A stretch of DNA of 64,000 nt, taken from the NCBI RefSeq assembly GCF_036365525.1, contig NC_090404.1:6882001-6946000 (forward strand), read 5' to 3'. This DNA is from Heterodontus francisci. Lineage: Eukaryota. The notes under the pieces are model-generated. The model saw nothing but the letters and a program-made list of their open reading frames with translations. It was not told the origin of the DNA and did no database searches. This document shows positions 8,534 through 62,466 of the stretch, piece by piece. Each line of letters begins with the position of its first letter. Position 1 is the stretch's first letter. The position numbers were made by a program, and so were the translations under genes.

Positions 8534-8925
8534 TCATTGACATGAATTGACGGTGCCCAACAGGACAACGGAAATGTTCACAAAACTTGGTTCACCGCTG
8601 GATTTATTAACTGTTCTGTTGATGATCGTCGAGGGGATCACTTCATGTCCCACCACACAGAAGTAAGAAGCGCCGCTGACCCACTCCTCCGCTGCAATGG
8701 ATAACATGCTGTAGATGAAGAAGGAGCTATTCTCGTTCTCTGCCATCACCTCGGTGTTCTTGTAGTTTCCAGGATTCACCGACTTGTCATTGACGGTCCA
8801 CTTGACGAAGATCTCTCGGGGGGAGCAACCGCTCACTGAGCAAGTGAGGGAGAGGAAGCTCTGAGCGGAGACATCTTCTGCTGGGGGCAGGAGGACAGAC
8901 ACGGACGGTACCCGCAGATCATTAT
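8534..8925 (-). pseudogene. IGHM: Orphan IgM Cmu4 exon with secretory tailpiece (copy 1), reading frame intact
   Basis: 392-nt exon, same length as the copy 3 exon. Acceptor ttttctgcag at 8926. Encodes ...[19 protein letters not shown]...YFCVVGHE...[24 protein letters not shown]. Two AATAAA at 8496-8501 and 8506-8511. No Cmu1-3 upstream and no TM exons downstream. Confidence 0.9.
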
Positions 8926-9224
8926 CTGCAGAAAAAATAAAATAAATGTCAATGAACGGGATAATTCCAGAGAGAATAAAACCGGTGGGTTAGATGTGAA
9001 AGGAATGTGCTTTGTGCGAGATTTTAAAGGTTTTCCTTTTACTCTCTGGGGCCTGTCCTGTTTTCCACTCTGGAGCAATCCTTCTCGCCGAGAATTTGAG
9101 CGATTAGACTGGGAAATTATGTAGAATTTACAGCACAGGAACAGGCTATTCTGCCCAACTAATCTGTACAATTCCTAATGCTGCACACAAAACGCCTCCC
9201 TTCTCCTCCTTCCATCATTTCACG

Positions 9225-26246: not shown

Positions 26247-26537
26247 CCGTCTCCCAACACTTTATGGCCTGTGCTCCTGTGAACAACCCAACACCAGTGG
26301 CTCCGTGGGCTACGGCTGTTTGGTGATGGACTACATCCACGATATCAGCAGCGTTTCCTGGAAGAAAGATAAAGAGACGATCAACCACTGGATTAAAAAC
26401 TTACCCGTCAGTGCTGAACAAGAAGGGATCCTACACCCTGAGCAGCCAGTTAACCATCAACGAGTCAGAGGTGGGAAGCAGCAAAATCGACTGAGAGGTT
26501 CGACGTGGAGAGTCGCTCTGGATCAAGGTAATTCCAG
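26247..26537 (+). pseudogene. IGHM: IgM Cmu1 exon, copy 2, 5'-truncated pseudo-exon
   Basis: Aligns with 62170-62462. Acceptor replaced by unrelated DNA, frameshifts, conserved Cys codon changed to TGA (GACTGAGAG vs TACTGCGAG). Donor CCAG|gttagt retained. Confidence 0.9.
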
Positions 26538-26749
26538 GTTAGTGTTGTGGAAACTGTGTAAAAACAGAAAAGCTATCGTGATCTTGTGTTGAGCTTTGGC
26601 TATATCACATTTAGAGGATTGTGCACTGTTCTGATCCCAGGAAACTCCAGGTAGTGTCTGCTTGACAACAACTAACCTATTAAAATAAAAGAACAGTTTG
26701 TATAAGTTATTAATGTCTTCTCGAAATGTCTAAAATGTTTTTCTTCAAG

Positions 26750-27067
26750 ATTGTAAAGGTGACATCGTCCATCCAACTATTATCCTCACCCAGAGTTCCA
26801 GTGAAGAAATCACAAGCAGCAGATTTGCAACTGTTGTGTGTTCAATCATCGATTTCCATCCAGAGTCAATAACCGTGAGTTGGTTGAAGGATGGACAACC
26901 CATGGATTGGAGCTTCGTCACCTCTACCGCCTGTGAAGTCAACGGGAACTTCTCGGCGACCAGTCGGCTGACTATCCCCGCTGGGGAATGGTTCACCAAC
27001 ACGGTCTATACCTGCCAGGTCTCCCATCAAGGGGTCACCCAAAGTCGAAACATCACCGGATCGCAGG
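26750..27067 (+). pseudogene. IGHM: IgM Cmu2 exon, copy 2 (frame and splice sites intact)
   Basis: 318 nt; caag|ATTGTAAAGGT...CAGG|gtaaga; encodes [10 protein letters not shown]...[19 protein letters not shown]...YTCQVSHQ. Confidence 0.92.
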
Positions 27068-27804
27068 GTAAGACACAAAATCCCAGGAAGCTCCAGATCA
27101 TTCTGTGCTCCAATGATAATCAAATTCAGCAATTTACTGGAATTAGTACAAAGCACTAAATAATTTCCCTATTCGCCAGTTATATGCCTCATTCCGCTGT
27201 GAGTGCTGAATTAGAATTGCTCACGGTTCAACATGTCATCACATCACCAAAGAATGGCTCCCTTTGCTTTGATGTCATACAGGGAGCGAAGTGGCCTTGC
27301 TTTCAGTTTTGTCGTGATTTGGCCGATCATATTCAGAGTGGCAAAAGGTGTCTGGAACTCTTTACTAGTCACAACCTTGGGATCAAGTGCCAGAAAGAGC
27401 ATCTTCCCTAATTAGAAAACTGTGTTCAATTCTGGACTCATGAACTCAGGAAGAATATATTGGCATTGGGAGTGATGCAACACAAATTGAGTAGAATGAT
27501 AGCGGGGCTGAACGGGTTAAATAAGAAGACAGGTTTCATTGACCAAACTGGTATTATTTTGTGTTTAGAAGATTAAAGGGTGACCTACTTGAGGTGTTTA
27601 AGATGTTTACTGGAATTGATGGAATCGACGGAGAAAAATATTTCCTCTGGTGGGCGACTCCAGAACAAGGGGCATAACCTTCAAATTAGACCAATGTCAT
27701 TCAGGGATGATATCAGGAAAGCTATTCACACAGCGCTTGAAGTTTGTCATCAATTCAAAATTTTCACGTAGAGATTGACAGCTTGAATTGATTGGCAAGG
27801 GTAT

Positions 27805-28113
27805 TTTGATTTAGAGGTGCTGCACTGAACCAGGCCCTTTGTCCCACCAAGTCTGTGCCAACCAACAACCACCCTATTTATACTAACACTACAGTAATCC
27901 CAAATTCCCTACCACCTGCCTACACTGGGGGCATTTTCCAATAGCTAATTATCTATCACCTGCAAGGGTTTGGCTGTGGGAATAAACTGGAGCACAAGGC
28001 GAAAACCCACACGGTCACAGGGAAAACTTGCAAACTCGGTTCAGGCAGTGCCCAGAATCGAACCCAAGTCGCTGGAGTTGTGAAGCGGCGGTGCTAACCA
28101 TTGCGCCACTGCA
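27805..28113 (-). mobile_element. HE1-like V-SINE in the Cmu2-Cmu3 intron of copy 2
   Basis: tRNA-like head GTGGCGCAATGGTTAGCACC, V-SINE core GAGTTTGCAAGTTTTCCCTGTGACCGTGTGGGTTTT, CR1-like tail; absent at the paralogous site near 58900. Confidence 0.8.
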
Positions 28114-28962
28114 CCGACCATCAAGGCTTCCTGTGTGTAGACGGTATTAAGATACAGATCAGCCAGTGTTGGATGGCTGGACAGGCTCGAGGGGCAAAAC
28201 GGCCTATTCTTTTTCCGATGTTTCTCTTCCTGCCCTCTGGTCACATGGACTTCTGACTCCAGTTTGACATATGAGGAGTTCTCACTCATGACATATTTCA
28301 GAAAACTGCCTTTCACCGTTATTGCAAATTATTCCCCACCTCAAAAAGATTCCATAGAATTGCACTTTCCCGACTTTTCGCCCCTGCTCCGATTGGTTGC
28401 TGCATATTTTCATCCTCCCAAATATCGTGACAAGGCGCAGGAAAATTAACGTTCTTCCCTGTTAAGCGCAATATCCGGAATTCCATTTGACTCTCGTTTT
28501 GAGCCAGTGTGAATTGTATGCACAGCTCGTGTCCTTGGGTGACAGGCCCGTTATACTCAGCGGAGATGTCACCTGGTGCAAGGATCGATAGACGGCCAGA
28601 AATACGAACATGCGAACTGAGGAATTAGCAAAAGTAAGCTATTCGGCACTTCTCACCTGCTCCACCAGGATTTCGGGAAGAACTTTATTCAGTGCGAAAC
28701 GCAATTTCTCACTCAATTATTTGATTTTTAAGCTGGGTACTTGTTTCAAAGCCCATTGCAGGCTTCTTAGGGTGCAATTACACAGTATATGTTAAAGAAT
28801 CTCCCGGAAGCTTTTTCCAGTTGTTGTCCTTCCAATAAATGGTATTATTTGAGCAACAGCTTGAGGCTGAAATCTCGAAGTTGATTTATTTTCCGAGAGG
28901 CTGAACACTGGTGTCTGATTCTGAAGATGAATGTTGGTTTGATTTTCATTTCTGTTTTACAG

Positions 28963-29271
28963 TTCCTTGTTCCTGCAATGATCCAGTAATTAAACTACTG
29001 CCACCATCAATAGAATAGGTCTTACTGGAGGCGACGGTGACCTTAACCTGAGTCGTGTCGAATGCTCCTTATGGCGTCAACGTGCCCTGGACACAAGAAC
29101 AGAAGCCTTTGAAATCAGAGATTGCTGCCCTACCCGGAGAGGATCCCGACAGCGTGATCAGCACCATAAACATCTCGACACAAGCCTGGCTGAGTGGTGC
29201 TGAGTTCAACTGCGTGGTGAGCCATCAGGATCTGTTGACTCCTCTCAGAGATTTTATCTGCAAGGAAGAAG
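28963..29271 (+). pseudogene. IGHM: IgM Cmu3 exon, copy 2, with two nonsense codons
   Basis: 309 nt, aligns with 57394-57702; TAG at 29016-29018 and TGA (replacing the conserved Cys) at 29049-29051. Confidence 0.92.
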
Positions 29272-29751
29272 GTGAGCGGTGAGATTGAAGCAATAAGTGA
29301 GAGGTGCCCCGATTTCTTGTGATTGTGAAAGGGAAAATTCTTCTTAACAAGTGCTCTAATGAACAACCCCAATAATTTAATTGTAATTCCACTAACGGAA
29401 TCCACTGGAAGCAGAGGTGATGCATATCAGGGGAAGTTAAATCGCAGATGAGGGAGAAATGATAGAAGGAGGAGAAGGAAGGAGGATTGTGTGCAGCATA
29501 AGGAATCGTACAGACTAGTTGGGCAGAATGGCCTGTTCCTGTTCTGTAAATTCTATACAATTTCCCAGTCTAATACCTTAAGTTCTCAGCGAGAAGGATT
29601 GCTCCGGAGTCTAAAACAGGACAGGTCCCAGAGGGGAAAAGGAAAGCCTTTAAAATCTCGCACAAAGCACTATTCCTCTCACATCTAACCACCAGTTTTA
29701 TTCTCTCTGGAATTCTCCAGTTTATTGATATCTATTTTAATTTTTCTGTGG

Positions 29752-30136
29752 ATAAAGATCTGCGGGAACCGTCCGTGTCTGTCCTCCTGCCCCCGGAAGA
29801 CGATGTCTCCGCTCAGAGGTTCCTCTCCCTCACCTGCTTAGTGAGAGGTTTCTCCCCCCGAGAGATCTTCGTCAAGTGGACCGTCAATGACAAGTCGGTG
29901 AATCCCGGCCACTACAAAAATACCGAGGTGATGGCGGAGAACGACAATAGCTCCTTCTTCATCCATTATCCATTGCAGCGGAGGAGTGGGTCAGCGGCGC
30001 TTCTTACTCCTGTGTGGTGGGACATGAAGCGATCTCCTTGCAGATCATCAACAGAACTGTTAATAAATCCAGCGGTAAACCGAGTTTTGTGAACATTTCC
30101 TTTGCACTGTTGGACACTGTTAATTCATGTCAATGA
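29752..30136 (+). pseudogene. IGHM: IgM Cmu4 and secretory tail, copy 2, inactivated
   Basis: Acceptor is tctgtgg instead of tctgcag; net 7-nt deletion near 29963 (385 vs 392 nt) causes a frameshift; both downstream AATAAA deleted. Confidence 0.92.
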
Positions 30137-44088: not shown

Positions 44089-44950
44089 AACTTGCCATTC
44101 TTACCTGGTCTGGCCGACATGTGACTCCAGACCCGCAGCAATGTGGTTGACTCTTAGCTGCCCTCTGAACTCAATTTGTGGGCAATCTGGGATGTTCAGC
44201 AAATGCTGGCCTGCCTGCGACACAACATCCCATGAAAGAAGAAAAAAAAATATTTTCTCTATGTCACTTACCACCAGAATCCCAATCCTGATTAATTTCA
44301 GCACAGTGGGATGGTGCCTCCTGTTAGTTACACTCGGATATTATTCTCACAGGTTCAGTCGATATTTGGGAAACAGACTCATATTCCCCATCGGGAAATT
44401 AGCAACACTGTCAGATAACGGCGGTAAGATATTATCTCAAAGTGATAAAGGCAGGGTTTGAATGTAGATGAATGTGACTGAGGTGGTTGACGGGGGCCTG
44501 GTTTGATGAACCTTCCGTTGGGGACACACAAGGAGAAGATTTCTTCTGGTTTCGCTGTGGAAATCTCCTGTGAAAACTGGTTGAACGAAAACGCAAGCTC
44601 ATTCTTTTCAAATGTGATCACTGTTTTGCTAGAGATAGCGACCAGGGGAAATCTATCCGACAGAGGGGGTAGTTCAGTGTAAACAGGGTATGCGGATGAT
44701 AATGAAGTTGATGCTCTCGATGAACATAAACAAACACTCAGTGTGATTGATGTCGGCCTGTAAAGTATACCCAAACCTCAGGAAAGACGATGCTTTCCTC
44801 ACATCATGGACTGCACGCACTGACTCACTGACTCCACCATCAGATACTTCATTCAGTGGCTCAAAGGTGCTTTGACCCTCATTTAAGTCTCGTTTCAATA
44901 TATGGCGGGTGGATTGGACACTGCTTCAAGCCAGAGGAACAATGGGACCA

Positions 44951-45020
44951 GGAAGTGACGTTGAACCAATAGGAGCCTCTGACGGAATTGTTCCGGTGCA
45001 GGATTGGCCTTTTAAAGAGA
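44951..45020 (+). promoter_or_regulatory. TCR V-type promoter motifs
   Basis: GGAAGTGACGT (ETS plus CRE-like) at 44951-44961, CCAAT at 44966, TTTTAAA near 45010, all upstream of the leader ATG at 45042. Confidence 0.55.
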
Positions 45021-45041
45021 CCGACAGGTTCGGTCTCGGCA

Positions 45042-45477
45042 ATGGCCATGCGGATATTCAGCGCCTGGGTTGTGTGTGCGGTGTTTATACTTGGTAAGGA
45101 TGACTTCAATCATGTTGTCTCCAAATTACTGTGTTAATATTATTTCAGTAACGCCTTTTAATTCTCGATCTTGTCTTCGTCCTGAACGCATGTTACAGAT
45201 CAAAATGATGGCGATACTGTTACTCAGTCCCAGTCTTCAGAAAGCGGGAGAGAAGGTGAAGCAGTGACTATAAGATGTACCTATAGCACAGGTATTAGTT
45301 ATATTGGTACCGGCAACAAGCAGAAAAAGACTCTCAGTTTGTTGTGTGGAGATGGTCTGGGGATACACGACAATTGAAAGGAGAAGATGTTGGAATTCGT
45401 TTCTCTGCTGAGCTCCAGACCGCGACTAAATTCACCAGTTTAACTATCTCGGGTCTGCAGCTGACTGACTCTGCCGT
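45042..45477 (+). pseudogene. T-cell receptor V alpha/delta-like pseudogene 1 (leader 45042-45093, V exon 45199-45477)
   Basis: Leader MAMRIFSAWVVCAVFIL ends with G|gtaagg (phase 1); acceptor ttacag. V exon reads DQNDGDTVTQSQSSESGREGEAVTIRCTYSTGIS / frameshift / LYWYRQQAEKDSQFVVWRWSG...RFSAELQTATKFTSLTISGLQLTDSAV. YYC and RSS are missing. Confidence 0.88.
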
Positions 45478-45861
45478 TCTCCTTCCTTCACCATCAGTGG
45501 ATTAAAGTCATATTGCCTTTATTGCCAGTCTCCAATTACCCTGAGATGAAGACTCCAGCCCCAAACGGATGATGTAGACTTTTAATAGCTTTGTGTCATG
45601 GACCCGCAAGACGGGCAATTGTAAAAGTGCAAGTAAAAATGGAAAATAGATGCCATTCTTAACACCACCAACCAGGTCCGGGGACTGAATACAAAAAATC
45701 ACATGAGCCAATTCAACACCTGACTAACATCATCTCACACTGATCATTGCACCCGTTCTCCTTCCTTCACCATCAGTGGATTAAAGTCAAACAACATTCT
45801 CCGTGAAATCAGTGTGATACTTCACGAATATTGTACCGGGTGCTCTGCGTTTCAGATCTTC

Positions 45862-47010
45862 ACATTCAAGAACACAAAAAATAGGAGCAGGAGTAGACCA
45901 TGTGGCCCATCGAGCCTGCTCCGACATTCAATACAATCATGGTTGATCTTAGACTTCAACTCCACTTTCCTGTCCCTTGATTCCCTGAGAGACCAAAAAA
46001 CTGCCTATCCCAGTCTAAAAATTATTCAACGATGGAGCATCCACAACCCTCTGGGGGAGAGAATTCCAAAGAATAACAACCCTTTGAATGAAGTAATTTC
46101 TCCTCATCTCAGTCCTAAATGATCGTTGCCTTCTCCTTAGACTGTGTCCCCGTGTTTTAGATTCCTCGATCCACGAATACAATCTCACAGTTCCTATCCT
46201 ATTCAGCCCCGTCAGAATCTTGAATGTTTCAATGAGATCGCCTTTCATTCTTCTAAACTGCAGAGAACATAGGCCCAATGTACTCATTGTACTCTCATCA
46301 TTAGAAAATCCCCTCAACCTAGGGACCAGTTTAGTGACCCTTCGCTGTACCGCCTCCAGTGCAAGTATATTCTTTCTTCCATGTGGAGACCAAAACTGCA
46401 GCCAGTATTCCAGGTGCGGTCTGACCAAACCATGTACAATTTTAGTAAGACTTCTTTATTCCTGTACTCCAATCCCCTTTCAATGAAGGCCAACATGCCA
46501 TTTGCCTTCCTAATTGCTTGCTGTACCTGCATGTTAACTGTCTGTGTTCTTTGCACAAGTACACCCAAGTCTCTTTGAACATCAACACTTACAAGTTTCA
46601 CACCTTGAAAAAAATATTCTGCTTTTCTATTCTCACCGCCAAAGCGAATAACTTCACACTTCCCTACATTATATTGCATCTGCAATCTTGTTGCCCGCTC
46701 ACTTAACCCGTCTATATCTCTTTGCAGCCTCCCTGTATCCTCCCGACAGCTTACCTTTCCATCCATCTTTCTAGCAGCAGCAAACGTAGATACATTACCC
46801 TCTGTTCCTTCATCTATGTCATTGATATAGATTGTAAATAGCTGAGGCCCCAGAGCTTATCCTTGTGACACTCCACTATTCACTGCCTGCCAACTTGAAA
46901 ATGCCTTATTCATGGCCACTCTTTGCTTCCTGTACATAAACCAATCCTCTATCCAGGCTAATATATTAACCTAAACGCAATAAGCCCTTGTCTTGCCTAT
47001 TAACCTTTTA
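45862..47010 (-). mobile_element. CR1 3' fragment
   Basis: LQRDIDGL...KCEVIRFG...VRPHLEYWLQFWSPH; tail at about 45865-45930. Confidence 0.88.
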
Positions 47011-47340
47011 TTTGAATATTGAACTGCGGGGTCCCAGTGTGGGGATACTGCGGCCGTTATGGAGTTTGGGCTTTTCGCTTTCTGGGCTCCTCTGGTATTG
47101 TTGTTTGATTATTATATTTGTGTTTATTACTGCGACTTTCTGCACATTCCACTATTGATAGAACTGACGTACATTCATCGACCTCTAGTTCTATTAGCCT
47201 CTCTGTCTATCTATCTGCCTGTATTATTATATTTCCAACTATCCCACTCTTCCCCTGTTAGTCAATCAATTCATCTTCGGCTGCTTCCTTTGTCTCCGGA
47301 CCAAGGTTTCCTTAAAATGAGAAGCATATTATCTCTTCTA

Positions 47341-47345
47341 CCTAC

Positions 47346-47406
<61 letters not shown>

Positions 47407-47420
47407 GATCTATCGATCTC
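47341..47420. repeat. (CTAT)n microsatellite
   Basis: About 16-18 tetranucleotide units just upstream of the second V exon. Confidence 0.95.
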
Positions 47421-47476
47421 TCTGTCTATTATCTATTCGACGTTCTGCATCCACGGTTAACCAGGAATATTTTTAG

Positions 47477-47764
47477 CGGGAGTGAGTTCTGGTGACTCTG
47501 TCAGACAGTGGTCAACAGAAGCCCAATATTTGGAAGGAGTTTCGATGAGCATTAATTGTATCTATTCAAACTCCAATGTGAGCTCTTCTGTGCAGCTTTA
47601 TCGTCAGAGCCAGAACATGGCTTCCACTTTCGGAATTCAGGCATATCCCGATGGAATGTACGAAGTTAACGGTCATTCTGGAAACGTTCGCAATTCGAGC
47701 TTTTCTCATCGTGACTGGGCTGCAGCTCGTTGACAGCGCCCTGTACTACTGTGTCTTGAACCTA
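47477..47764 (+). pseudogene. T-cell receptor V alpha/delta-like pseudogene 2
   Basis: Acceptor tttttag. Reads GVSSGDSVRQWSTEAQYLEGVSMSINCIYSNS...VQLYRQ / frameshift / KLTVILETFAIRAFLIVTGLQLVDSALYYCVLNL, followed directly by an RSS. Leader not confidently located (candidate about 47059-47094). Confidence 0.8.
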
Positions 47765-47801
47765 CACAGAAAAAGACCTCGGGATACTTCGTACAAATAC
47801 C
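47765..47801 (+). other. Damaged 23-spacer recombination signal sequence
   Basis: CACAG at 47765-47769, 23 nt (47770-47792), then nonamer ACAAATACC at 47793-47801; consistent with loss of TG from CACAGTG. Confidence 0.75.
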
Positions 47802-47825
47802 GTGTTCTGTAAGGTCTTTGGTAGG

Positions 47826-50165
47826 CGGTGAAGGAACCAATAGGAGGGGAAAATATACTTGCCCTTGTCCTAACCAATCTGTCTGCCGCACATGCATCTG
47901 TCCATGACAATATTTGTACGAGTAACCACCGCACAGTCCTTGTGGAGACAAAGTCCCGTCTTCATCATGAGGATACCCTCCATCGTTGTGTGGCACGACC
48001 ACCGTGTTAAATGAGATAGATTTCGAACAGACATAGCAATGCAAAACTGAGCATCCATGAGGCGCTGTGGGCCATCAGCAGCAGCAAAACTTTACAACTG
48101 CAATCTGTAACCTCATGGCCCAGCATATTCCCCACTCTATCATTGTGAATCATCAGCGAACATCCCCACTTCTGATCTTATGATTGAAGGAAAGCCAGGG
48201 AACCAACCCTGGCTCAATGAAGAGTGCAGAAGGGCAAGCCAGAAGCAGCACCAGGCATACCTCAAAATGAGGTGTCAACCTGCTGAAGCTGCAACACATG
48301 ACTACTTGCTTGCCAAACAGCGTAAGCAGCATGCGATAGACAGAGCTAAACGATCCCATAACCAACGGATATGATCTAAGCTCTGCAGTCCTGCCACATC
48401 CAGCCATGAATGGTGGTGGACAATTAAACAACGAACCGAAAGAGGTGGCCACAAATATCCCCATCCTCAATGATGGGGGAGCACAGCACATCAGTGCAAA
48501 AGATAAGGCCAAATCAGTTGCAATAATCTTCAGCCAGAAATGCAGAGTGGATGATCCATCTCAGCCTCCTCCTGAAGTCCCCAGCATCACAGATGCCAGA
48601 CCGAAGGCACTGGATACTGCAAAGTGTATGGGACCTGACAACGTCCCAACAATTGTACTGACGACCTGTGCTCCAGAACTTGCTGCGCCCCAAGCCAAGC
48701 TGTTCCAGTACAACTACAACACTGGCATCTGCCCGGCAATGTGGAAAATTGCCCAGGCATGTCTGGTACTCTAAAAGCAGGACAAATCCAATCCGGCCAA
48801 TTACATGCGCCAAACCACCCCCCGCCCCCACCCCACCTCCCCACAAGTCCACGTTCAATCATCAGTAAAGTGATGAAAGGTGCCGTCGAAAGTGCTATCG
48901 TGCAGAATTTACTTAGCAATAACCTGCTCAGTGACGCTACGTTTGGGTTCCGCCAGGGCCACTCAGGGGCCGACCTCTTTACAGCCTTGGTTCAAGCATA
49001 GAAAAAAGAGCTGAACGCAAGAGGTGAGGCGAGAGTGACTGCCCTTTACATCAAGGCAACATTTGACCGAGAATGACAGCAAGGAACCCGAGCAAAACTG
49101 AGGTCAATGGGAAACAGGGGAAAACCCTCCACTGGTTGGAGTCGTACCTAGCGCAAAGGAAGATGGTTGTCGTTGTTGGAGGTCAATCATCTCAGCTCCA
49201 GGACATCACTGCAGGCGTTCCTCAGGGTAATGTCCTAGGCCCCACCATTTTCAGCTGCTTCATCAATGACCTTCCTTCAATCATAAGGTCGGAAGTGGGG
49301 ATGTTTGCTGATGATTGCACAATGTCCAGCACCATTCATGACTCCTCAGATACTGAAGCAGTCCGTGTAGAAATGCAGCAAGATCTGGACAATATCCAGG
49401 CTCGGGCTGATAAGCAGCAAATAACATTCGTGCCACACAAGTACCAGGCAATGACCATCTCCAACAAGAGAGAATCTAACCATCTCCCCTTGACATTCAA
49501 TGGCGTTACCATCGCTGAATCCCCCACTGTCAACATCCTGAGGGTCACCATTGACCAGAAACTGAACTGGAGTAGCCATATAAGAGCTACAAGAGCAGGT
49601 CAGATGCGAGGAATCCTGCGGCAAGTAACTCACCTCTTGACACTCCAAAGCCTGTCCACTATCTACAAGGCACAAATCAGGAGTGTGATAGAATACTCTC
49701 CACTAGCCAGGATGGGTGCAGCTCCAACAATACTCAAGAAGCTCGACACCATCCAAGACAAAGCAGCCTGCTTGATTGTCACCACATCCACAAACATTCA
49801 CTCCCTCCACCGCCGCACACAGTGGCAGCAGTGTGTACCACCTACAGGATGCACTGCAGCAGCGCACCAAGGCTCCTTCGACAGCACTTTCCAAACCCGC
49901 GGCCTCTACCAAATAGAAAGACAAGAGCAGCAAATGGTTGGGAACAACACCACCTGCAAGTTCCCCTCCAAGCCACACACCATCCCGATTTGGAACTATA
50001 TCACCATTCCTTTCCTGTCGCTGGGGGAAATCCTGGAACTGCCTGCCTAACAGCACTGTGGGTGTCCCTACCCCACATGGACTGCAGCGGTTCAAGAAGG
50101 CTACTCACCACCACCTTCTCAAGGGCAATTAGCGACGCCCACATCCCATCAATGAAATAAAAAGC
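47826..50165 (+). mobile_element. CR1/L2-group LINE (family B), 5'-truncated ORF2
   Basis: ILALVLTN, SNH endonuclease end; RT GVPQGNVLGPTIFSCFINDLP...GMFADD (49073-50050); 3' end at about 50160. Confidence 0.9.
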
Positions 50166-53755: not shown

Positions 53756-53883
53756 CTTCACCAGAGTGACGGCAGCACTGTAGAAAATGCTCAGGAAGAA
53801 CAGGATGATGAATGTGGAAGCGGTTGTCCAGATGTTGCCGCTCTCTTCCTCATTGTCTTCAATCCAGATGTGGTCTGAGGAAT
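53756..53883 (-). CDS. IGHM: IgM TM1 exon, copy 3
   Basis: cgtag|AT... encodes DSSDHIWIEDNEEESGNIWTTASTFIILFFLSIFYSAAVTLVK|gtgag, the conserved antigen-receptor TM motif; phase matches the internal Cmu4 donor at 56563. Confidence 0.93.
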
Positions 53884-54479
53884 CTACGCGGATATAGAGG
53901 AGGAAATATCTTCAAATAGTTTATTAATCCAGCATATATTTTGCATTCGAATGTCTCTTCCTTCAGCTATTATTGGTTTTCTAATTTAATTTTCAATGTG
54001 TGGCTATTAAGTTAATCATGCTCAGTAATCTATCTCTGTTACCAACTCCACAATCATTCTTCCTTTATCATCGTCCTCCAGGCCTTATTGGAAAATGTGT
54101 CAGTTTTTTCTTCAGTGTCAGGCGCTTTTTTATTTTAGATGCAGTTGCGGTTTTTCTTAAGGGATTATTATGGTGAAATATGAGATATCGAGGGAGGTTT
54201 ACTGATCGATAACAATTATTTTGAAGATGGGTTCGGATATCTACTTATTTGGAGATTGTCAATTGTGCTGAGTAAGAGCTCGGATGCGAGTTCCAATCTT
54301 ATTTGTATGTGATGAATGTCGCTTGAAAATCATTTACATTCCTCAGTTTCTAAGTGAGAATTTTGCTTCGTTATCTTTTTAGGTCCACCGTGCATTCGGG
54401 AAGTTGTTGGAGATGGTGTCCATTCAATTAGTGCATTTGAATTCTACTTTCGTCAACAGCCTGGTGATTTTGTCTGCTC

Positions 54480-55420
54480 ATTTAGTGTTTGTGCAAATGT
54501 GTACGAGTATCTTCCTTTGCATCACTCTCTGTTTCCATGTGTACGTGTGTGTGTGTGAGTGTTAATGTGTGGGAACAATGTAGTTGTTTGGGTGCCCATG
54601 TGTGTGTCAATGCGCGTGTTTATATGTTAATGCCTATGTGTATGTGTCCATGTATGTTAGTGTGTTAATGTGCCAATGTGCATTGATTTGTGTAATCAAG
54701 TAGCCGTCTGTGTGTGTATGGTGTGTGTGTATGTGTGTGTTTGTGGTGTGTATATGTGTGTGTGTAAGTCTATATGTGTTGTGTTTCTTTATCCATCTTT
54801 GTTTATGAGCGGTTGATGTTTATTTATGTCGGTGTCTGTGTCCCGATGCATGTGTTAATATCTGTGTTTCTGTGTTGATGGATGTGTTTATGTTTCCCTG
54901 TGTTTCAATGTGTGTTTATATGTCCATGTGTGTGTGCTAATGTGTTATTTATGCCTGCTTGTGTCCCCATGAGTGTGCGAATGTATGTTTTTGTTGATGT
55001 CTACGTTTATGTATTAATGCATATATTAATGTGTGTTTATGTGTGCATGTGTGCTAATGTATGTGCTGATGTGCGCGCTTGTGTATCCATGTTAATATTG
55101 GTGTCTATTTGTTTGTGAGTGAGTGTGTTAATGTGTTAGTGTGTCTGTTTATCTGTGTGCATATGTACCCGAGTCTGTTAATATGCGAGTGTATGTGTCC
55201 ATGTATGTGTTAATGTGTGTGATAGTGTGTGCTTTTATGTCTAGGTTTCTGCTTTCGTGAGACTGTACTAACGTGTGCATTTATGTTCGTGTTTGCGTAT
55301 GTGACTGTGGGAATCTTTCTTTCAGCGTTTGGGTTTGTTTGTGTATGTAGATGCAAATGTGTGTTTGTACATGTGCGTGTGTTTATGTGTTTGTTTATGT
55401 CCGTGTGCCTGTACATTTTT
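54480..55420. repeat. Degenerate TG-rich low-complexity tract in the secretory-TM1 intron
   Basis: About 900 nt of interrupted (TG)n and TATGTG. Confidence 0.85.
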
Positions 55421-56456
55421 ATTATTAAACGAAATTTCAGAGAGCACAAATAACCACGTCTAGCCCTGACGGTGTGCACTGCAGAGAATATTCTTTATCG
55501 TTCTGTGCGTAAATCTATTCTGTGCGAGATGCAATATGACATCAGCTGGATGAATGCAACAATGAAAATGATGGGCCTCAGCACAACAGGAATAGTGGAT
55601 GATTAAATCACCAGTTAGATTTAGACTATTGGAATTTAATCTGTCAGGGAACGTGGCCAACAGGAAAATGTTTTAAGATATCATGTTGCATAAAGATATA
55701 TTTTGCAATATGTTTCCCATTTGGAATGTTTAAACCTTCGTACAGTGAACTGGAAGCCGACTTTGAACTGATGGCAATTGAATCCGATCATGAAGAGCAG
55801 TTGGCTTCCAATCTCTCTGCAGGGGGAGTGGGAGTATAGTGGGTTAACAAATGCCCTTACTCCTTTCTCTTTCGAGGAATTGGTGAGGGGTGGGGGGCCT
55901 ATTACAGTAGGTCCACAATTGCCTTCCTTCTCTATTGGTGAAGTGGAGTAACAGTGGATTAACAATTACCCTTTCCCCCTCTCTGTTTCGGATGTGGATC
56001 TACAGTAGATTAATAAATTGTACTTTCCCCTCTTTCTGATGGAGAATTGTGAGTGCAGATCGTACTTGTGTGTGGCCTTCGGTTCAGTTCCCAGAGCATG
56101 TGATGCTGAAACTGCAAACTGACCTCAATACCGAAGGGGTGGACAACACGAGAAGCAGGAATACCGATATCTAAATGCACTTCGTTTGTTCATTAGAAAA
56201 GGGAAATTTTCAGATATCCCCAGACAAGGCAGGAGGAAAGCTAAGTTGCTGGTGTTACCTTCCGGAATCCTGTAATGAATCAGTTTTCCTCTGTCGCTAA
56301 CCTGTGGGATCTGAGTTGGGAGCACTGATTGCACAAGATTTGGGCCCGAGACCTGCAAATATCCCACTTTAGATGAATAGATCTACCCTTAGAAAATGTG
56401 GGAAGCAGAATTAATTGAGCGCTTGTGTATTTGAATCGTGATTGGAGGAAAATGTC

Positions 56457-56472
56457 TTTATTGATTTTTATT
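56457..56472 (-). terminator. Two AATAAA polyadenylation signals for secreted mu mRNA
   Basis: TTTATT at 56457-56462 and 56467-56472, 30-45 nt after the stop codon. Confidence 0.8.
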
Positions 56473-56500
56473 TAAGAATTAAAATGCAATCGAGAGATTC

Positions 56501-56892
56501 TCATTGACATGAATTGACAGTATCCAACAGTGCAAGGGAAATGTTCACAAAACTCGGTTTACCGCTGGATTTATTAACTGTTCTGTTGATGATCTTCAAG
56601 GGGATCGCTTCATGTCCCACCACACAGGAGTATGAAGCGCCGCTGGCCCACTCCTCCGCTGCAATGGATAACAGGCTGTAGATGAAGTAGGAGCTCTTGT
56701 CGTTCTCCGCCATCACCTCGGTGTTCTTGTAGTTACCGGGATTCACCGACTTGTCATTGACGGTCCACTTGACGAAGATCTCTCGGGGGGAGAAACCTCT
56801 CACTAAGCAGGTGAGGGAGAGGAACCTCTGAGCGGAGACATCGTCTGCCGGGGGCAGGAGGACAGATACGGACGGTTCCCGCAGATCTTTAT
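56501..56892 (-). CDS. IGHM: IgM Cmu4 exon with secretory tailpiece, copy 3
   Basis: ttctgcag|ATAAAGATC; [17 protein letters not shown]...[11 protein letters not shown]...[23 protein letters not shown] (tailpiece NIS glycan site, penultimate Cys); internal donor AGCG|gtaaac. Confidence 0.96.
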
Positions 56893-57393
56893 CTGCAGAA
56901 AAATTAAAATCGACATCAATGAACTGGATAATTCCACAGATAATTAAACCGTTGGTTAGATGTGAGAGAAATGTGATTTGTGCTGAATTTTAAAGGTTTC
57001 CCTTTCCCCTCTGCGGCCTGTCCTGTTTCCCAGCCCGGAGCAGAGGCGGATGCAATCCCCTTCGCAGAGAACTTAAAGGATTAGACTGGAAAATTACATA
57101 GAAGTAAAAAGCACAGGAACAGGCCATTCAGCCCAGCTAGCCTGTGCTGGTGTTTATGCCGCCCACGAACCTCCTCCCACCTCACTTCATCTCTTTCTAA
57201 ACCTTTCTCCCTCATCTACTTATCTAGCTTCCCTGTAATTGCATCACCTCTGGTTCCAGAGCGTTTCGTTTGCAGAATTACAATTAAATTATCAGAATAA
57301 TCCATGAGAACACTTAATAGGACGAATTGTTCCTTGTACAAACACCGGAAATAAGCACAACCTCTCACTTATTGTTTCAATCTCACCGCTCAC

Positions 57394-57702
57394 TTTTTTC
57401 CTTGTGGATGAAATCTCTGAGAGGAGTCGGCAGATCCTGATGGCTCACCACACAGTAGAAATCAACCCCACTCAGCCAGGATTGTGCCGAGATGTCTACG
57501 GTGCTGATCACACTGTCGGAATCCTCTCCGGGTTGCACGGCAATCTCAGATTTCAAAGGCTTCTGTTCTTGTGTCCAGGACACGTTGACACCATAAGGAG
57601 CATTAGACACGAGGCAGGTTAAGGTCACCGTCGCCTCCAGTAAGACCTGTTCTATTGATGGTGGCAGTAGCTTAATTACTGGATCATTGCAGGAACAAGG
57701 AA
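57394..57702 (-). CDS. IGHM: IgM Cmu3 exon, copy 3
   Basis: 309 nt, open; [16 protein letters not shown]...LTCLVS...VSW...[13 protein letters not shown]; ttacag acceptor and gtgagc donor. Confidence 0.96.
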
Positions 57703-58267
57703 CTGTAAAACAGAAATGGCAATAAAACAAAGATTCATCTTCAGAATCAGACACCAATATTGAGCCTTCACTGTCTCTAGGAGAATAAATCAACTTCGAG
57801 ACATCGACCTCAGGCTGTTGCTTTATTAATATCGTTTATTGGAAGGACAACAACCTGAAAAAGCTTCCGGGAGATTCTGTAACATATACTGTGTACTTGC
57901 ACCCTAAAAAGCCTATAATGGGCTTTGAAGCAAGTACCCAGAGTAAAAATCGAATAATTGCGGGAGAAATTGTGTTACGCACTGAATAATGTTCTTCCCG
58001 AAATCCCTTCGGAGCAAGCTCGAAGGGCCGTATGGCCTACTCCTGTTCCTAATTCGGATGTTCGTTTGTTAGTATTTCCGCCCGTCTATCAGTCCTTGCA
58101 CCGGATCACATCTCCTCTAAATATAATGGCTCTGACACCCACGAGCTCTTTATCTAATTCACACTGGCTCATAACGAGAGTCAAATGAAATCCCGAATTT
58201 TAGGCCCAACAGGAAACAAACTTAATTTTCTGGCACCTTGTCACGGTATTTGGGGAGAGGAAAATAT

Positions 58268-58608
58268 TTAGATTTTAGATTTAGAGATACAGCACTGAAA
58301 CAGGCCCTTCGGCCCACCGAGTCTGTGCCGACCATTAACCACCCATTTATACTAATCCTACACTAATCCCATATTCCTGCCATTTCCTCACCTGTCCCTA
58401 TATTCCCCTCCCACCTACCTATACTAGGGGAAATTTATAATAGCCAATTTACCTATCAACCTGCAAGTCTTTTGGCTTGTGGGAGGAAACCGGAGCACCC
58501 GGAGAAAACCCACGCAGACACAGGGAGAACTTGCAAACTCCACACAGGCAGTACCCAGAATTGAACCCGGGTCGCTGGAGTTGTGAGGCTGCGGTGCTAA
58601 CCACTGCA
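58268..58608 (-). mobile_element. HE1-like V-SINE in the Cmu2-Cmu3 intron of copy 3
   Basis: tRNA head, V-SINE core GGAGTTTGCAAGTTCTCCCTGTGTCTGCGTGGGTTTTCTCCGGGTGCTCCGG, CR1-like tail with (TCTAAA)n; absent at about 28403 in copy 2. Confidence 0.85.
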
Positions 58609-59455
58609 TGTGAAGGAACCAATCGGAGGAGGGGTGAAAAATCGGGAAAATGCACTTCTGAGGAATCGCTTTGAGGTGCAGAATAACTTACAATAACGGT
58701 ATGAGGCAGTTTTCTTATATCTGTCATGAGTCAGAACGCCTCATATGTCAGTCTGCAGTCAGAAGGCGATCTGACAAGAGGGCAATAATAGAAACATAGG
58801 AAAAAGCGTAGGTCATTCAGCCCCTCCAGCCTGTTCTGCCATTCAAATAGGCAATGGCTGACCTGCATCTTAATCCCGTCTGCCCATATGCGATCCTTAA
58901 TAGTCTTGCTTTGCATAAATCTATCAATCTCAACATTAAAATTTCCAATTGATGCCAAACTTCAAGAGCGAGTTGAGGGAGAGAATACCAGATCACCGAT
59001 AGCCACTGCATAAATGTTAGCTTCCTGATATCATCCCTGAATAACCTTGGTCTCATTTGAAAGTTATGCCCCCTTGCTCTCGAGTCCCTCACCAGAGGAA
59101 ATATTTTTCTCCATCGACTCCATCAATTGCAGTAAACATCTTAAACACCTCAATTAGATCCCCCTTCAATCCTGAAAGCAATGCCAGTTTGGTCTGTGAA
59201 ATCTGTCCTCTTAATTTAACCCGTTCAGCCGCGTTACAATTCAAGTCAGTTTCTGTTGCACCACTCCCACGGCCAATAGATTCCTCCTGAACTCCGGAGT
59301 TCTGAATTGAACACAGTTTTCTAAATCGATGCTCTTTCTAGCGCTTGATCCCGAGGCTGTAACCAGGAAACGTCCAGCCACTTATTGCCGCTCTGAATAT
59401 AATCAGCCAACTCAAGATAAACCTGATATCAAGGCCACCTCATTCACTATGTGAC

Positions 59456-61433
59456 AACAATGAGATGTAAGACTGAGGATTGGGAGTGTTTTAGAAAGCA
59501 GCAAAGGACTACCAAAAAGTTGATAAAAAGGGAAAAAATAGAATTTGAGAGTAAACTAGCCATCAATATAAAAATAGTTTGGAAGATCTTTTATAAGTAC
59601 ATAAAAAGGAAAAGAGAAGCCAAAGTAGACGTTGGTCCCTTAGAGGCAGAGACAGGAGAAATCATCATGGGGAATGAGGAAATGGCAGAGGCATTGAACA
59701 AATATTTTGTGTCTGTCTTCACAGTAGAAGACACAAGTTCCATACCAGAAACAGGCAGTAACCTAGGGGCTAAAAAGAGTGAGAAAATTAAGGATATTGA
59801 TATCAGCCGAGAAAAAGTATTGGAGAAACTTGACAGAGTAAAATCTGACAAGTTCCCAGGACCTGATGGCTTACATCCTGGGGTTCTAAAAGAGATAACT
59901 GCAGAGATAGTGGATGTGATGGCTGTGACTTTCCAGAATTCCTTAGATTCAGGAATGGTCCCATCAGCCTGGATGTTATGGCAAATGTTATGCCGCTTTT
60001 CAAGAAAGGAGGTAGAGAGAAAACAAGGAACTACAATCCAGTTAGCCTGACGTCAGTCGTTGGAAAGATGCTGGAAACTATTATTCAAGAAGTCTTGACA
60101 TTACACTTGGAAAAGCATAGTATGATTAGAACAAGTCAGCGTGGTGTTACTAAAGGGAGATACTGTTTAACAAATGTATTAGAGATTTCTGAGGATGTAA
60201 CTAGTAGGGCAGATAAAGGGGAACGAGTAGATGCAGTGTACCTGGACTTTCAAAAGGCATTCAGTAAGGTGCCACATAAAAGAATAATAGGCAAGGTCAG
60301 GGCACATGGTGCTGGAGGTAGTATATCAGCGCGGACAAAGGATTGGTTAACAGACAGGAAGCAGAGAGTGGGCATAAATGAGGCATTTTTAAGTTGGAAG
60401 GCAGTGAATAGTGGGGTGCCGCAAGGATCAGTGCTGGTGTCTCAGCTATTTACACTCTATATTAATGACTTGGAAGAAAAGACAGAGAGTAATGTATCTA
60501 AGTTTGCTGATGATACAAAGTTCAGTGGAAAGGTAAGCTGTGGGGAGGATATATAGAGAGGCTGCAAAGAGATATAGACAGGTTAAGTGACTGACAAAAA
60601 GTTGGCAAATGGAGTATTATATAGGGAGTTCTGAAATTGTTCACTTTGGTCGTAAAAATAGAAAAGCCAAATATTTTGGTAGGAGTGAAAATGGTAAGTG
60701 TTAATGTTCCAAGAGACTTGGGGGTACTCGTGCAAGGAACACACAAAGTTACCATACAAGTGCATCCGGCTATTAGGAAGGTAAATGGCATGTTGGCCTT
60801 TTGTGCAAGGAGATTGGAGTACAGGAATAAAGAAGTCTTACCAAAATTGTACAGGGCTTTGGTGAGATCGCAAATGGAATACTGCGTGCAGTTTTGGCCT
60901 TCACATTGAAGAAAGGATGTCCTTTCACTTGAGGCAGTGCTGCGAAGATTTACTAAATTGGCCGCATTGGTTGATGGGCTTGTCCGGTGATGAGAGACTG
61001 AGTAAATTGGGCCTATATTCTCTGGTGTTTAGAAGAATGAAAGGCAATCTAATTGAGACACACGAGATTCTGAAAGGGCTTGATAGGGTAGAAGCTGAGA
61101 GATTGTTCCCATTGGTCAGGCAATCTAAAACACGGGGAAACAGCCTCAGGATAAGGAGCCAATAATTCAGGACTGAGATGAGAAGAAATTACTGCACTCA
61201 AAGAATTGTGAATCTTTGGAATTCTCCACCACAGAGGGTTGTGGATGCTCCATCATTGAATACATTTAAGGCTGGCATAGATAGATGTTTGGCCTCGCGG
61301 GTAATCAAGGGATATGGGGAGCGGGCAGGAAAGTGGAATTGAAGCCCAAGAACAGCCATGATCGTATTGAATGGCGAAGCAGGCTCGATGGGCCATATGG
61401 TCTACTTCTGATCCTATTTCTTGTGTTCTTGTA
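59456..61433 (+). mobile_element. CR1 LINE ORF2, 5'-truncated, antisense in the Cmu2-Cmu3 intron of copy 3
   Basis: YLDFQKAFSKVPH, GVPQGSVL, SKFADDTK; tail at about 61390-61433; copy 2 is uninterrupted at about 27273. Confidence 0.92.
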
Positions 61434-61648
61434 TCAAAGCAGAGGGAACCATTATTTGGTGATGCAATAACATGTTGAACTTTGAGCAAAACTAATTCAG
61501 CACTCACAGCAGAACAAAGCAAAATAAAACCTACATGATGGTAAATTAGAAATTATTCTGTGATTTGTACTAATTCCAATAATTTCCTGCCTTTGATATT
61601 CATCATAGAACAGAATGATCTGGAGCTTTCTCCATTTGTGTCTCTTAC

Positions 61649-61966
61649 CCTGAGATCCGGTGATGTTTCGGCTTTGGGTGACCGCTTGATGGGAGACCTG
61701 GCAGGTATAGACCGTGTTGGTGAACCATTCCCCAGCGGGGACTGTCAGCCGACTGGTCGCTGAGAAGTTTCCGTTCACTTCACAGGCGGGAGAGGTGACG
61801 AAGCCCGAATCCATGGATTGTCCATCCTTCAACCAACTCACGGTTATTGACTCTGGATGGAAATCGATGATTGAACACAAGACAGTTGCAAATCTGCTGC
61901 TTGTGATTTCTTCACTGGAAGTCTGGGTGAGGAGAACAGTTGGATGGACGATGTCGCCTTGACAAT
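61649..61966 (-). CDS. IGHM: IgM Cmu2 exon, copy 3
   Basis: 318 nt, open; [18 protein letters not shown]...[20 protein letters not shown]...YTCQVSHQ; gaag acceptor and gtaaga donor. Confidence 0.96.
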
Positions 61967-62169
61967 CTTCAAGAAAAACATGTTAGACATTTCTAGAAGA
62001 AATTAATAACTAATGCAAACTGTTCTTACATTTTAACAGATGTCAAGCAGACACTAACTGGAATCTCCAGGAATTAGAACAAAGCACAGTGCTCTAAATG
62101 TGATATAGCCAAAGCTCTACAAAAGATTATTATAGCTTTTGTGTTTTTCACAGTTTCCACAACACTAAC

Positions 62170-62466
62170 CTGGAATTTCCTTGATCCAGACTGACTCTCC
62201 GCGTCGAACCTCGCAGTAGATTTTGCTGCTTCCCACCTCTGATTCGGTGATGGTTAACTGGCTGCTCAGGGTGTAGGTTCCCTTCTTGTTCAGCACTGAT
62301 GGGTAAGTCTTCAGTCCAGTGGTGATCGTCTCTTGATCTTTCTTCCAGGAAACGCTGGTGATTTGGGGGATGTAGTCCATCGCCAAACAGCCGTAGGCAA
62401 CGGAGCCACCGGTGTTGGGTTGTTCACAGGAGCACAGACCATAAAGTGTTGGGGGAGACGGTGTCG
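62170..62466 (-). CDS. IGHM: IgM Cmu1 exon, copy 3
   Basis: 297 nt, open; [16 protein letters not shown]...YGCLAMDY...VSWKKD...IYCEVRRG; ttcccag acceptor and gttagt donor. Confidence 0.96.

What the first reader, a model, noticed from the sequence alone, without database searches (positions are those of the whole stretch)
44940..47801. T-cell receptor V alpha/delta-like segments embedded between IgM constant-region clusters
Seen: two V pseudogenes split by frameshifts, so the ORF track shows neither as a V domain. They have TCR alpha/delta signatures (D(T/S)V(T/R)Q, EG..V.I.C.YS, WYRQ, SLTISGLQLTDSA, DSALYYC, 23-spacer RSS, ETS/CRE promoter) rather than VH ones (WVRQ, octamer or VH framework 1). 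They lie 6-8 kb from an intact Cmu gene and about 15 kb from a Cmu pseudogene. Established: shark TCR delta can use IgH V segments, and Ig-like V genes occur in the nurse shark TCR alpha/delta locus. Inference: this is a hybrid IgH/TCR region where a complete, apparently functional IgM constant gene sits among TCR V segments. It could give cis access of VH to TCR D-J-C, or of TCR V to IgH D-J-Cmu, or be an orphon block.
Basis: partly seen in the sequence, partly recalled or inferred. Interest (0 to 1): 0.85.

Follow-up and report, generated by a model that had tools for sequence, protein, structure and literature searches.

The report
Dead TCR V segments between IgM clusters
Two broken T-cell-receptor alpha/delta-type V gene segments really do lie between two back-to-back IgM antibody gene clusters in this (horn) shark chromosome. 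Both are dead relics, and this mixed antibody/T-cell-receptor layout was published for four other sharks and rays in 2025.

Summary
At 44.9-47.8 kb (+ strand) there are two V gene segments, each split by one frameshift.

- **V1:** its leader and V exon are 73-83% identical to the V of a sawshark chain model. That model matches human TCR delta chains over its whole length.
- **V2:** much more diverged. In a tree it still falls with the TCR alpha/delta-type V domains, next to an elephant-shark V, and apart from lambda, VHH and VH-like V domains.
- **Setting:** the segments lie between a dead IgM constant gene (26.3-30.1 kb, +) and an open one (62.5-53.8 kb, -).

V1 has no YYC and no recombination signal. 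V2 has its leader overrun by a (TCTA)n repeat, Leu in place of Trp41, an 8-residue gap in FR3, heptamer CACAGAA and a 21-nt spacer rather than 23. Short-read unitigs of the same animal show no indel differences, so the frameshifts are real. Three probable RNA runs show no transcript of either V.

The "hybrid IgH/TCR region" reading is right as a description. Flajnik et al. 2025 (PMC12227049) already report TCR alpha/delta-type V exons between IgH clusters in four elasmobranchs. This scan has also noted the same layout at other places on this chromosome. These two V segments cannot make a functional chain.

The parts
44950..44975 (+). V1 promoter-like motifs: AGGAAGTGACGT (ETS core plus CRE half-site) and CCAATAGGAG
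   Evidence: Read directly. The GTGA.G..GAACCAATAGGAG block recurs at 47840-47856, downstream of V2. Function was not tested.
45042..45093 (+). V1 leader exon (MAMRIFSAWVVCAVFIL + 1 nt), donor GTAAGG
   Evidence: It resembles the leader MRIFSAWIVFAVFIMG of P0001.
45199..45479 (+). V1 V exon: TCR alpha/delta-type V, one frameshift near 45300 (CDR1), cut off after ...LTDSAV; no YYC, no RSS
   Evidence: It is 83% and 73% identical to P0001 in its two pieces. phmmer gives E = 3e-17. It falls in the P0001 family clade in the tree. A DNA unitig covering 45046-45442 shows no indel.
45474..45789 (+). Two exact 37-nt direct repeats (45474-45510 and 45753-45789) around 242 nt of single-copy DNA; the first repeat starts inside V1's last codons
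   Evidence: Depth is about 44 over 45514-45717. The origin is unexplained.
45864..47014 (-). 5'-truncated LINE fragment with reverse-transcriptase ORF pieces, very high copy number
   Evidence: RT-like ORFs at 46015-46766 on the minus strand. It is 80% identical over 1168 nt to 60273-61434. Depth is 10^3-10^5.
47317..47436 (+). Likely V2 leader start (ATG 47317, MRSILSLL...) running straight into a (TCTA)n microsatellite (47337-47436)
   Evidence: The leader assignment is an inference from similarity to MR(I/R)xS(I/A)W leaders of alpha/delta V segments.
47477..47764 (+). V2 V exon: diverged TCR alpha/delta-type V; Leu for Trp41, 8-residue gap in FR3, frameshift in the T run 47701-47704, then ...LQLVDSALYYCVLNL
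   Evidence: The best local match is Callorhinchus P0033 domain 1 at 37%. The tree pairs it with that domain (95/89) inside the alpha/delta-type clade. The only PDB hits are weak TCR alpha chains. A DNA unitig covering 47430-47850 shows no indel.
47765..47801 (+). V2 recombination signal: heptamer CACAGAA, 21-nt spacer, nonamer ACAAATACC
47840..48014 (+). Possible relic of a third V: the same CCAATAGGAG promoter block (47847-47856) and a leader-like ORF from ATG 47967 (MRIPSIVVWHDHRVK, then a stop); no V exon follows
   Evidence: No further V exon is found in the window. This assignment is tentative.
53780..62465 (-). IgM constant gene copy 3: C-mu1 to C-mu4 and TM1 all open; VH-D-J lies beyond the window's end
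   Evidence: C-mu4 plus tailpiece matches IgM heavy constant mu end to end, E about 1e-48.
26254..30133 (+). IgM constant pseudogene copy 2: frameshifts in C-mu1 and C-mu4, no TM exon found
8537..8944 (-). Lone C-mu4 exon (copy 1) with a 3' flank homologous to that of copy 3

Best explanation
These are two decaying gene segments of the TCR alpha/delta V (TRAV/TRDV) type, with possibly the promoter and leader stump of a third. They lie in the spacer between two convergent, tail-to-tail IgM mini-clusters of a horn-shark-type genome. They belong to the large elasmobranch antigen-receptor complex in which IgM clusters and the TCR alpha/delta V array are interleaved on one chromosome. They have no present function. 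Each carries several independent disabling lesions, and no transcript of them was seen. They are leftovers of duplication, inversion and retroelement turnover in this region. Shown: their sequence class, their lesions and their position. Inferred: that they are non-functional, and how they arose.
For: - V1 is 73-83% identical, leader included, to the V of P0001 from Pristiophorus japonicus.
- P0001 aligns over its full length with human TCR delta chains, E = 1e-35 to 1e-37.
- The other hits are mostly shark and chimaera V segments of the same kind, among them two horn shark proteins.
- In the tree, V1 and V2 both sit inside a 54-row alpha/delta-type V clade (87/98). That clade is separate from lambda, VHH and the VH-like domains of P0003 and P0041.
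- Lesions: frameshifts in both; V1 without YYC or RSS; V2 with Leu41, an FR3 gap, a microsatellite in the leader, heptamer CACAGAA and a 21-nt spacer.
- The frameshifts are not assembly slips: unitigs from DNA reads show no indel there.
- The three probable RNA runs have zero depth over V1's 5' part and all of V2.
- The flanking IgM genes are confirmed.
- The same layout is published for four other elasmobranchs (PMC12227049).
Against: - The tree's reference set was collected with V1 as the query, so it is biased. It holds no shark light-chain, TCR beta or TCR gamma V, and its outgroups are tetrapod lambda, camelid VHH and bamboo-shark VH-like V.
- V2's placement rests on 36-37% identity to a truncated Callorhinchus model.
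- The RNA runs are only guessed to be RNA, their tissue is unknown, and they are held as contigs, so silence is not shown.
- No long read or contig spanning V to C-mu was available, so the adjacency rests on the assembly itself.
Confidence: 0.85

Rival explanations
1. The V segments, or intact alleles of them, are working TCR alpha/delta V segments used by long-range rearrangement to TCR D-J-C elsewhere on the chromosome.
For: - V1 keeps an intact-looking promoter, leader, splice sites and open reading pieces without stop codons.
- V2 keeps an RSS-like signal.
- The DNA unitig over V2 differs from the assembly at 5 bases, so a second allele probably exists.
Against: - The frameshifts are present in the read-derived unitigs too.
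- V1 has no Cys104 and no RSS.
- V2 lacks Trp41 and part of FR3.
- No RNA was seen over either V.
Confidence: 0.04
2. The V segments are placed 3' of an IgM constant gene in inverted orientation, like TRDV3 or TRBV30 in mammals. They are, or recently were, joined by inversion to that cluster's D-J to give TCR-V/C-mu chains.
For: - V1 and V2 are on the + strand, 6-9 kb beyond the 3' end of the open minus-strand C-mu copy.
- V2 carries a long-spacer (23-type) RSS remnant. From general knowledge of shark IgH clusters, not tested here, this would pair with a 12-spacer 5' D signal.
Against: - Both V segments are dead.
- The spacer is 21 nt and the heptamer is poor.
- The cluster's VH-D-J lies outside the window, so its signals could not be read.
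- TCR-V/C-mu chains are not mentioned in the parts of PMC12227049 read here, which describe the reverse (VH joined to TCR delta).
Confidence: 0.04
3. The two V segments are not TCR V segments but Ig light-chain V, VH/TAILV-type V or non-rearranging IgSF V domains.
For: - The FR3 motif SLTISGLQ also occurs in lambda V, and the single best PDB hit of V1b is an antibody light chain.
- Pfam can only say V-set, and weakly.
Against: - The nearest proteins in 1.8 billion are V segments joined to a TCR delta-like C.
- The tree separates them from lambda, VHH and VH-like V.
- V2 ends in YYC plus an RSS-like signal without a J motif, so it is a rearranging-type segment.
Confidence: 0.04
4. The adjacency of TCR V segments and IgM genes is an assembly artefact of a repeat-rich region.
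For: - The region is full of LINE copies.
- No read or contig spanning V to C-mu could be laid.
Against: - Unique stretches are tiled by unitigs at an even single-copy depth of about 40-48.
- The same layout is published for four chromosome-level assemblies of other species.
- First readers noted it at several other places on this chromosome (unchecked).
Confidence: 0.03

Closest known systems
Elasmobranch antigen-receptor complex (AgRC): IgM/IgW/IgNAR clusters linked to TCR alpha/delta, with TCR alpha/delta-type V exons between IgH clusters (Flajnik et al., Sci Adv 2025, PMC12227049)
   Same: TCR alpha/delta-type V exons lie between IgM mini-clusters on one chromosome, and there is no mixing with other isotypes inside a cluster.
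   Different: [quoted passage not shown] Here the V segments are shown base by base to be pseudogenes, which the main text of the paper does not address.
TRAV/TRDV gene segments of sharks, for example the V of the Pristiophorus japonicus 'T cell receptor alpha chain-like' model P0001 and the V of Heterodontus francisci XP_067869908
   Same: Split leader, framework motifs G-D-(S/T)-V-(T/R)-Q, EGE.VT..C.Y, WYRQ and SLTISGLQLTDSA; 73-83% identity for V1.
   Different: The two copies here are frameshifted. V1 lacks Cys104 and the RSS. V2 lacks Trp41 and has a 21-nt spacer.
TAILV and VH segments inside the shark TCR delta locus, and VH-to-TCR-delta trans-rearrangement (cited in PMC12227049)
   Same: All are part of the same Ig/TCR intermingling in cartilaginous fish.
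   Different: Those are Ig-type V segments near or used by TCR delta. Here the reverse holds: TCR-type V segments sit among IgM clusters. In the tree they do not group with the VH-like domains of P0003 and P0041.
Inverted V segment 3' of the constant gene in TCR delta and TCR beta loci (TRDV3, TRBV30; mentioned in PMC12227049)
   Same: The V segments lie beyond the 3' end of a constant gene, in the opposite transcriptional orientation (relative to IgM copy 3).
   Different: The constant gene is C-mu, not a TCR C. The V segments are dead, and no inversional joining has been shown.

Membership tests
TCR alpha/delta V gene segment (TRAV/TRDV) | Nearest sequence relatives are V domains joined to a TCR alpha or delta constant region | tested here: met
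   V1: the best hit of 1.8 billion proteins is P0001 (E = 3e-17, 73%; 83% for the first piece). P0001 matches human TCR delta chains over V and C. V2 is weaker: it is sister to a Callorhinchus V inside the alpha/delta-type clade, and its only PDB hits are TCR alpha chains at E about 0.5-1.
TCR alpha/delta V gene segment (TRAV/TRDV) | V-set fold landmarks: Cys23, Trp41, Cys104 | tested here: not met
   V1 has Cys23 and Trp41, but the exon ends before Cys104. V2 has Cys23 and Cys104 but Leu at position 41 and an 8-residue FR3 gap. These failures are what mark them as pseudogenes of the family.
TCR alpha/delta V gene segment (TRAV/TRDV) | Split leader, short intron, V exon | tested here: met
   V1: ATG 45042, donor GT at 45094, acceptor AG at 45197-45198. 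V2: the acceptor at 47475-47476 is present, and the leader is only inferred and is disrupted by (TCTA)n.
TCR alpha/delta V gene segment (TRAV/TRDV) | Heptamer, 23-nt spacer and nonamer directly 3' of the coding end | tested here: not met
   V1 has none. V2 has CACAGAA, 21 nt, ACAAATACC.
TCR alpha/delta V gene segment (TRAV/TRDV) | Found rearranged to J or D-J and spliced to C alpha or C delta in transcripts | tested here: inconclusive
   Three probable RNA runs of the same animal show no contig on V1's 5' part or on V2. Tissue is unknown and only contigs are held.
Ig heavy-chain V (VH) / TAILV | Groups with VH-type frameworks | tested here: not met
   The two V segments are separated from camelid VHH and from the VH-like second domains of P0003 and P0041 in the tree. 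No canonical shark VH reference could be obtained (one search returned only 2 proteins).
Ig light-chain V | Groups with VL | tested here: inconclusive
   The two V segments are separate from 7 tetrapod lambda V domains (95/85), but no shark sigma, kappa or lambda reference was available.
Elasmobranch AgRC layout (Flajnik et al. 2025) | TCR alpha/delta-type V exons located between IgH mini-clusters on the same chromosome | tested here: met
   V1 and V2 at 44.9-47.8 kb lie between C-mu copy 2 (26.3-30.1 kb) and copy 3 (53.8-62.5 kb). Linkage to TRAC/TRDC and PSMB5 is not testable from one window.

The most novel reading that the evidence does not exclude
TCR-type V segments sit just 3' of IgM constant genes in inverted orientation, the geometry of TRDV3 and TRBV30. 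That position could reflect a once-used, or elsewhere in this locus still-used, route of inversional joining of TCR alpha/delta V segments to IgM D-J, giving TCR-V/C-mu chains. V1 and V2 would then be dead witnesses of that route.
Probability: 0.05. Interest if true: 0.7.

Novelty: new member of a known kind. Interest (0 to 1): 0.2.

Why it matters
It adds one more species, and a base-level example, to the recently published picture that IgH clusters and the TCR alpha/delta V array share one chromosomal complex in sharks and rays. That complex is thought to explain VH-TCR delta trans-rearrangement, NARTCR and TCR hypermutation.

The two V segments here are non-functional, so this window teaches nothing new about receptor function. 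Its modest value is as a record of how such V segments decay (frameshift, 3' truncation, microsatellite and LINE invasion). It is also a reminder to look at the intact V segments that other windows of this chromosome report in the same inverted position 3' of C-mu.

Tried and rejected
- **The search for homologous proteins with V2a:** no word-sharing candidate, which says only that no close relative exists.
- **ESM Atlas for V2a:** no usable hit; scores were at most 0.88, to unrelated arthropod clusters.
- **Pfam:** V-set below the cut-off for the pieces, and it cannot separate V classes.
- **PDB searches of the pieces:** a mixture of TCR and light chains for V1b and only weak TCR alpha for V2a, so not decisive alone.
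- **Search for shark VH references through the VH-like domain of P0003:** returned only 2 proteins, so the tree lacks canonical shark VH and all shark IgL, TRBV and TRGV.
- **V1's missing 3' end:** a VYYC at 47118-47132 was considered and rejected. The preceding sequence has no FR3 resemblance and no credible RSS follows.
- **LINE as the agent that cut V1:** rejected as shown, because about 385 nt of single-copy DNA separate V1's end from the LINE.
- **Joined C-mu protein:** the spliced C-mu exons were searched exon by exon only.
- **V1 and V2 read-through:** they were read through with X at the frameshift only inside a script, for the tree.
Full report
**What is in the sequence**

The stretch 44.9-47.8 kb (+ strand) holds two V gene segments.

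V1:
- Its upstream region has AGGAAGTGACGT (44950-44961) and CCAATAGGAG (44966-44975).
- The leader exon is 45042-45093 (MAMRIFSAWVVCAVFIL), with donor GTAAGG and a 105-nt intron.
- The V exon starts at 45199 and reads DQNDGDTVTQSQSSESGREGEAVTIRCTYSTGIS.
- It then changes frame near 45300, in CDR1, and continues YWYRQQAEKDSQFVVWRWSGDTRQLKGEDVGIRFSAELQTATKFTSLTISGLQLTDSAV.
- The V sequence stops there, at 45479. No YYC and no recombination signal follows, and none is found elsewhere in the window.

V2:
- The V exon starts at 47477 behind an AG acceptor.
- It reads GVSSGDSVRQWSTEAQYLEGVSMSINCIYSNSNVSSSVQLYRQ... and shifts frame in a T run at 47701-47704.
- It ends ...FLIVTGLQLVDSALYYCVLNL.
- Directly after come CACAGAA, 21 nt and ACAAATACC (47765-47801; counted).

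- The spacer is 21 nt, not 23.
- Only V1 has WYRQ.
- V1 has no 3' end at all.

**Is it more than chance?**
- V1's second piece alone scores E = 3e-17 against 1.84 billion representative proteins.
- A relaxed heptamer/nonamer scan of both strands of the whole window gives two hits, one of them exactly behind V2's YYC.
- tblastn with 64 V domains finds V-like coding sequence only at these two places in the 64 kb.

**What class of V?**

The best hit of V1 is P0001, a Pristiophorus japonicus model named 'T cell receptor alpha chain-like'.
- Identity is 83% over the first piece and 73% over the second, and the leaders are alike.
- P0001 as a whole aligns end to end with human TCR delta chains in the PDB, E = 1e-35 to 1e-37. 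V1's family is thus one that is spliced to a TCR delta-like constant region.
- Further hits are mostly V segments of Heterodontus francisci, Chiloscyllium and Callorhinchus. A few lambda and VHH proteins of other vertebrates are also among them.

V2 is far more diverged.
- No word-sharing relative was found.
- The only PDB hits are weak TCR alpha chains.
- The best local match is 37% identity to the first V of Callorhinchus P0033.

I built a maximum-likelihood tree of 66 V domains, with V1 and V2 read through with X at the frameshift, inside a script only.
- Both fall inside a 54-row clade of alpha/delta-type V segments (support 87/98).
- V1 sits with the P0001 family. V2 is paired with P0033 domain 1 (95/89).
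- Seven lambda V domains, camelid VHH and the VH-like second domains of bamboo-shark P0003 and P0041 are outside that clade.

The tree has limits. The reference set was gathered with V1 as the query, and it has no shark light-chain, TRBV or TRGV sequences. An attempt to collect shark VH failed. I take V1 as firmly TRAV/TRDV-type and V2 as probably so.

**State of the genes**

Both are pseudogenes with more lesions than the frameshifts. V1 lacks Cys104 and the RSS. An alignment shows the following for V2:
- Leu in place of Trp41. Its Callorhinchus partner shares this, so it may be old.
- An 8-residue gap where RFSAELQT stands in relatives.
- The frameshift.
- A poor heptamer and a short spacer.

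V2's likely leader (ATG 47317, MRSILSLL...) runs straight into a (TCTA)n array at 47337-47436.

Laying public runs gave these results:
- Unitigs of a DNA run of the animal that holds the window cover V1 (45046-45442) and V2 (47430-47850) at single-copy depth of about 40-48, without any indel difference. The frameshifts are real.
- The stretch 45820-47043 has depths of 10^3-10^5. It is a 5'-truncated LINE on the minus strand, 80% identical to a copy in the C-mu2/C-mu3 intron of the neighbouring IgM gene.
- Three runs guessed to be RNA have zero depth on V1's 5' part and on all of V2.
- Only V1's conserved FR3 is touched, by a 1250-nt contig of a paralogue.

**Species**

The loose ends of that paralogue contig translate to YEDKADFAKN and VYYCAFRLTVM. 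These match Heterodontus francisci XP_067869908 (P0005). Other agents' notes on this genome also call it horn shark.

**Surroundings**

tblastn with the exons of the open copy shows three IgM constant-region copies.
- **Copy 1:** a lone C-mu4 at 8537-8944 (-).
- **Copy 2:** 26254-30133 (+), with frameshifts in C-mu1 and C-mu4 and no TM exon.
- **Copy 3:** on the minus strand, with C-mu1 (from 62465), C-mu2, C-mu3, C-mu4 (to 56501) and TM1 (about 53.8 kb) all open.

C-mu4 with its tailpiece matches IgM heavy constant mu end to end, E about 1e-48.

Copies 2 and 3 are convergent. Their 3' flanks are homologous out to about 34 kb and about 50.7 kb. The V block lies in the spacer between them, 14.8 kb behind copy 2 in the same orientation and 6 kb behind copy 3 in the opposite orientation. 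No D, J, VH or TCR C element is in the window. The VH-D-J of copy 3 lies beyond 64 kb.

**Comparison with what is known**

Flajnik et al. [quoted passage not shown] Horn shark is not in that paper, and I found no horn-shark-specific account.

Within this scan the same layout has been noted at several other places on this chromosome. One follow-up reached the same conclusion (s1-872043). I used that note only as a lead to the paper, which I then read myself.

**Most likely explanation**

V1, V2 and a possible third stump are dead TRAV/TRDV-type segments left in an inter-cluster spacer of the interleaved IgM/TCR alpha-delta complex. They are being eroded by indels, a 3' truncation, a microsatellite and LINE insertion. 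The stump is a promoter block at 47847-47856 and a leader-like ORF at 47967-48014. They do not work. The class, lesions and position are shown; the origin by duplication and inversion of the region is inferred.

**Rivals**
- Working V segments: contradicted by the lesions in both assembly and reads.
- A different V class: contradicted by homology and the tree, with the reference-set caveat above.
- Mis-assembly: not testable with long reads here, but unlikely given even single-copy tiling and the published precedent.
- A past or present inversional route from TCR V to IgM D-J-C. The geometry relative to copy 3 mimics TRDV3 and TRBV30, but nothing here shows use.

**Verdict**

This is a new member (another species, another locus copy) of a known kind, and interest is low.

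Noticed in passing
window 47840-48014 (+): Just behind V2's RSS the V1 promoter block recurs (GTGAAGGAACCAATAGGAG). About 110 nt further on is a leader-like ORF, MRIPSIVVWHDHRVK then a stop, resembling alpha/delta V leaders (MRxxSIWVVW). No V exon follows before a LINE begins. It is probably the stump of a third V.
   Followed up: partly
window 45474-45510 and 45753-45789: Two exact 37-nt direct repeats bracket 242 nt of single-copy DNA. The first copy begins inside V1's last codons (GCC GTT), so the V1 breakpoint itself was duplicated later. The mechanism is unclear: a very long target-site duplication, or a partial tandem duplication.
   Followed up: partly
window 47475-47585: The DNA unitig of the same animal differs from the assembly at 5 bases within 110 nt at the start of V2's exon (47475 A>T, 47481 A>T, 47489 C>A, 47512 T>C, 47585 C>A). 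47475 is the A of the splice acceptor. It is probably the other haplotype of a freely drifting pseudogene.
   Followed up: no
window 22154-24443: A 27-nt minisatellite of about 85 copies lies about 2 kb upstream of C-mu1 of the pseudogene copy 2, where the J-C intron should be. No VH, D or J was found upstream of this copy.
   Followed up: no
window 8537-8944 (-) and 7279-8522: A lone C-mu4 exon (85% identical to copy 3) has a 3' flank homologous to that of copy 3. No C-mu1 to C-mu3 lies beside it, and a LINE abuts it at 9178. It is a third, truncated IgM copy.
   Followed up: partly
window 37164-37459 and 52570-52814: The same 67-nt minisatellite occurs behind both IgM copies 2 and 3, in opposite orientation.
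   Followed up: no
P0002 (Heterodontus francisci XP_067869829): This RefSeq model fuses two alpha/delta-type V segments with retroelement-derived sequence directly after ...QLTDAA. That is the same FR3 position at which V1 here is cut off, and the element is of the same family as the one at 48.1-48.8 kb of the window. FR3 truncation of V segments with retroelement sequence nearby may be recurrent in this genome.
   Followed up: no
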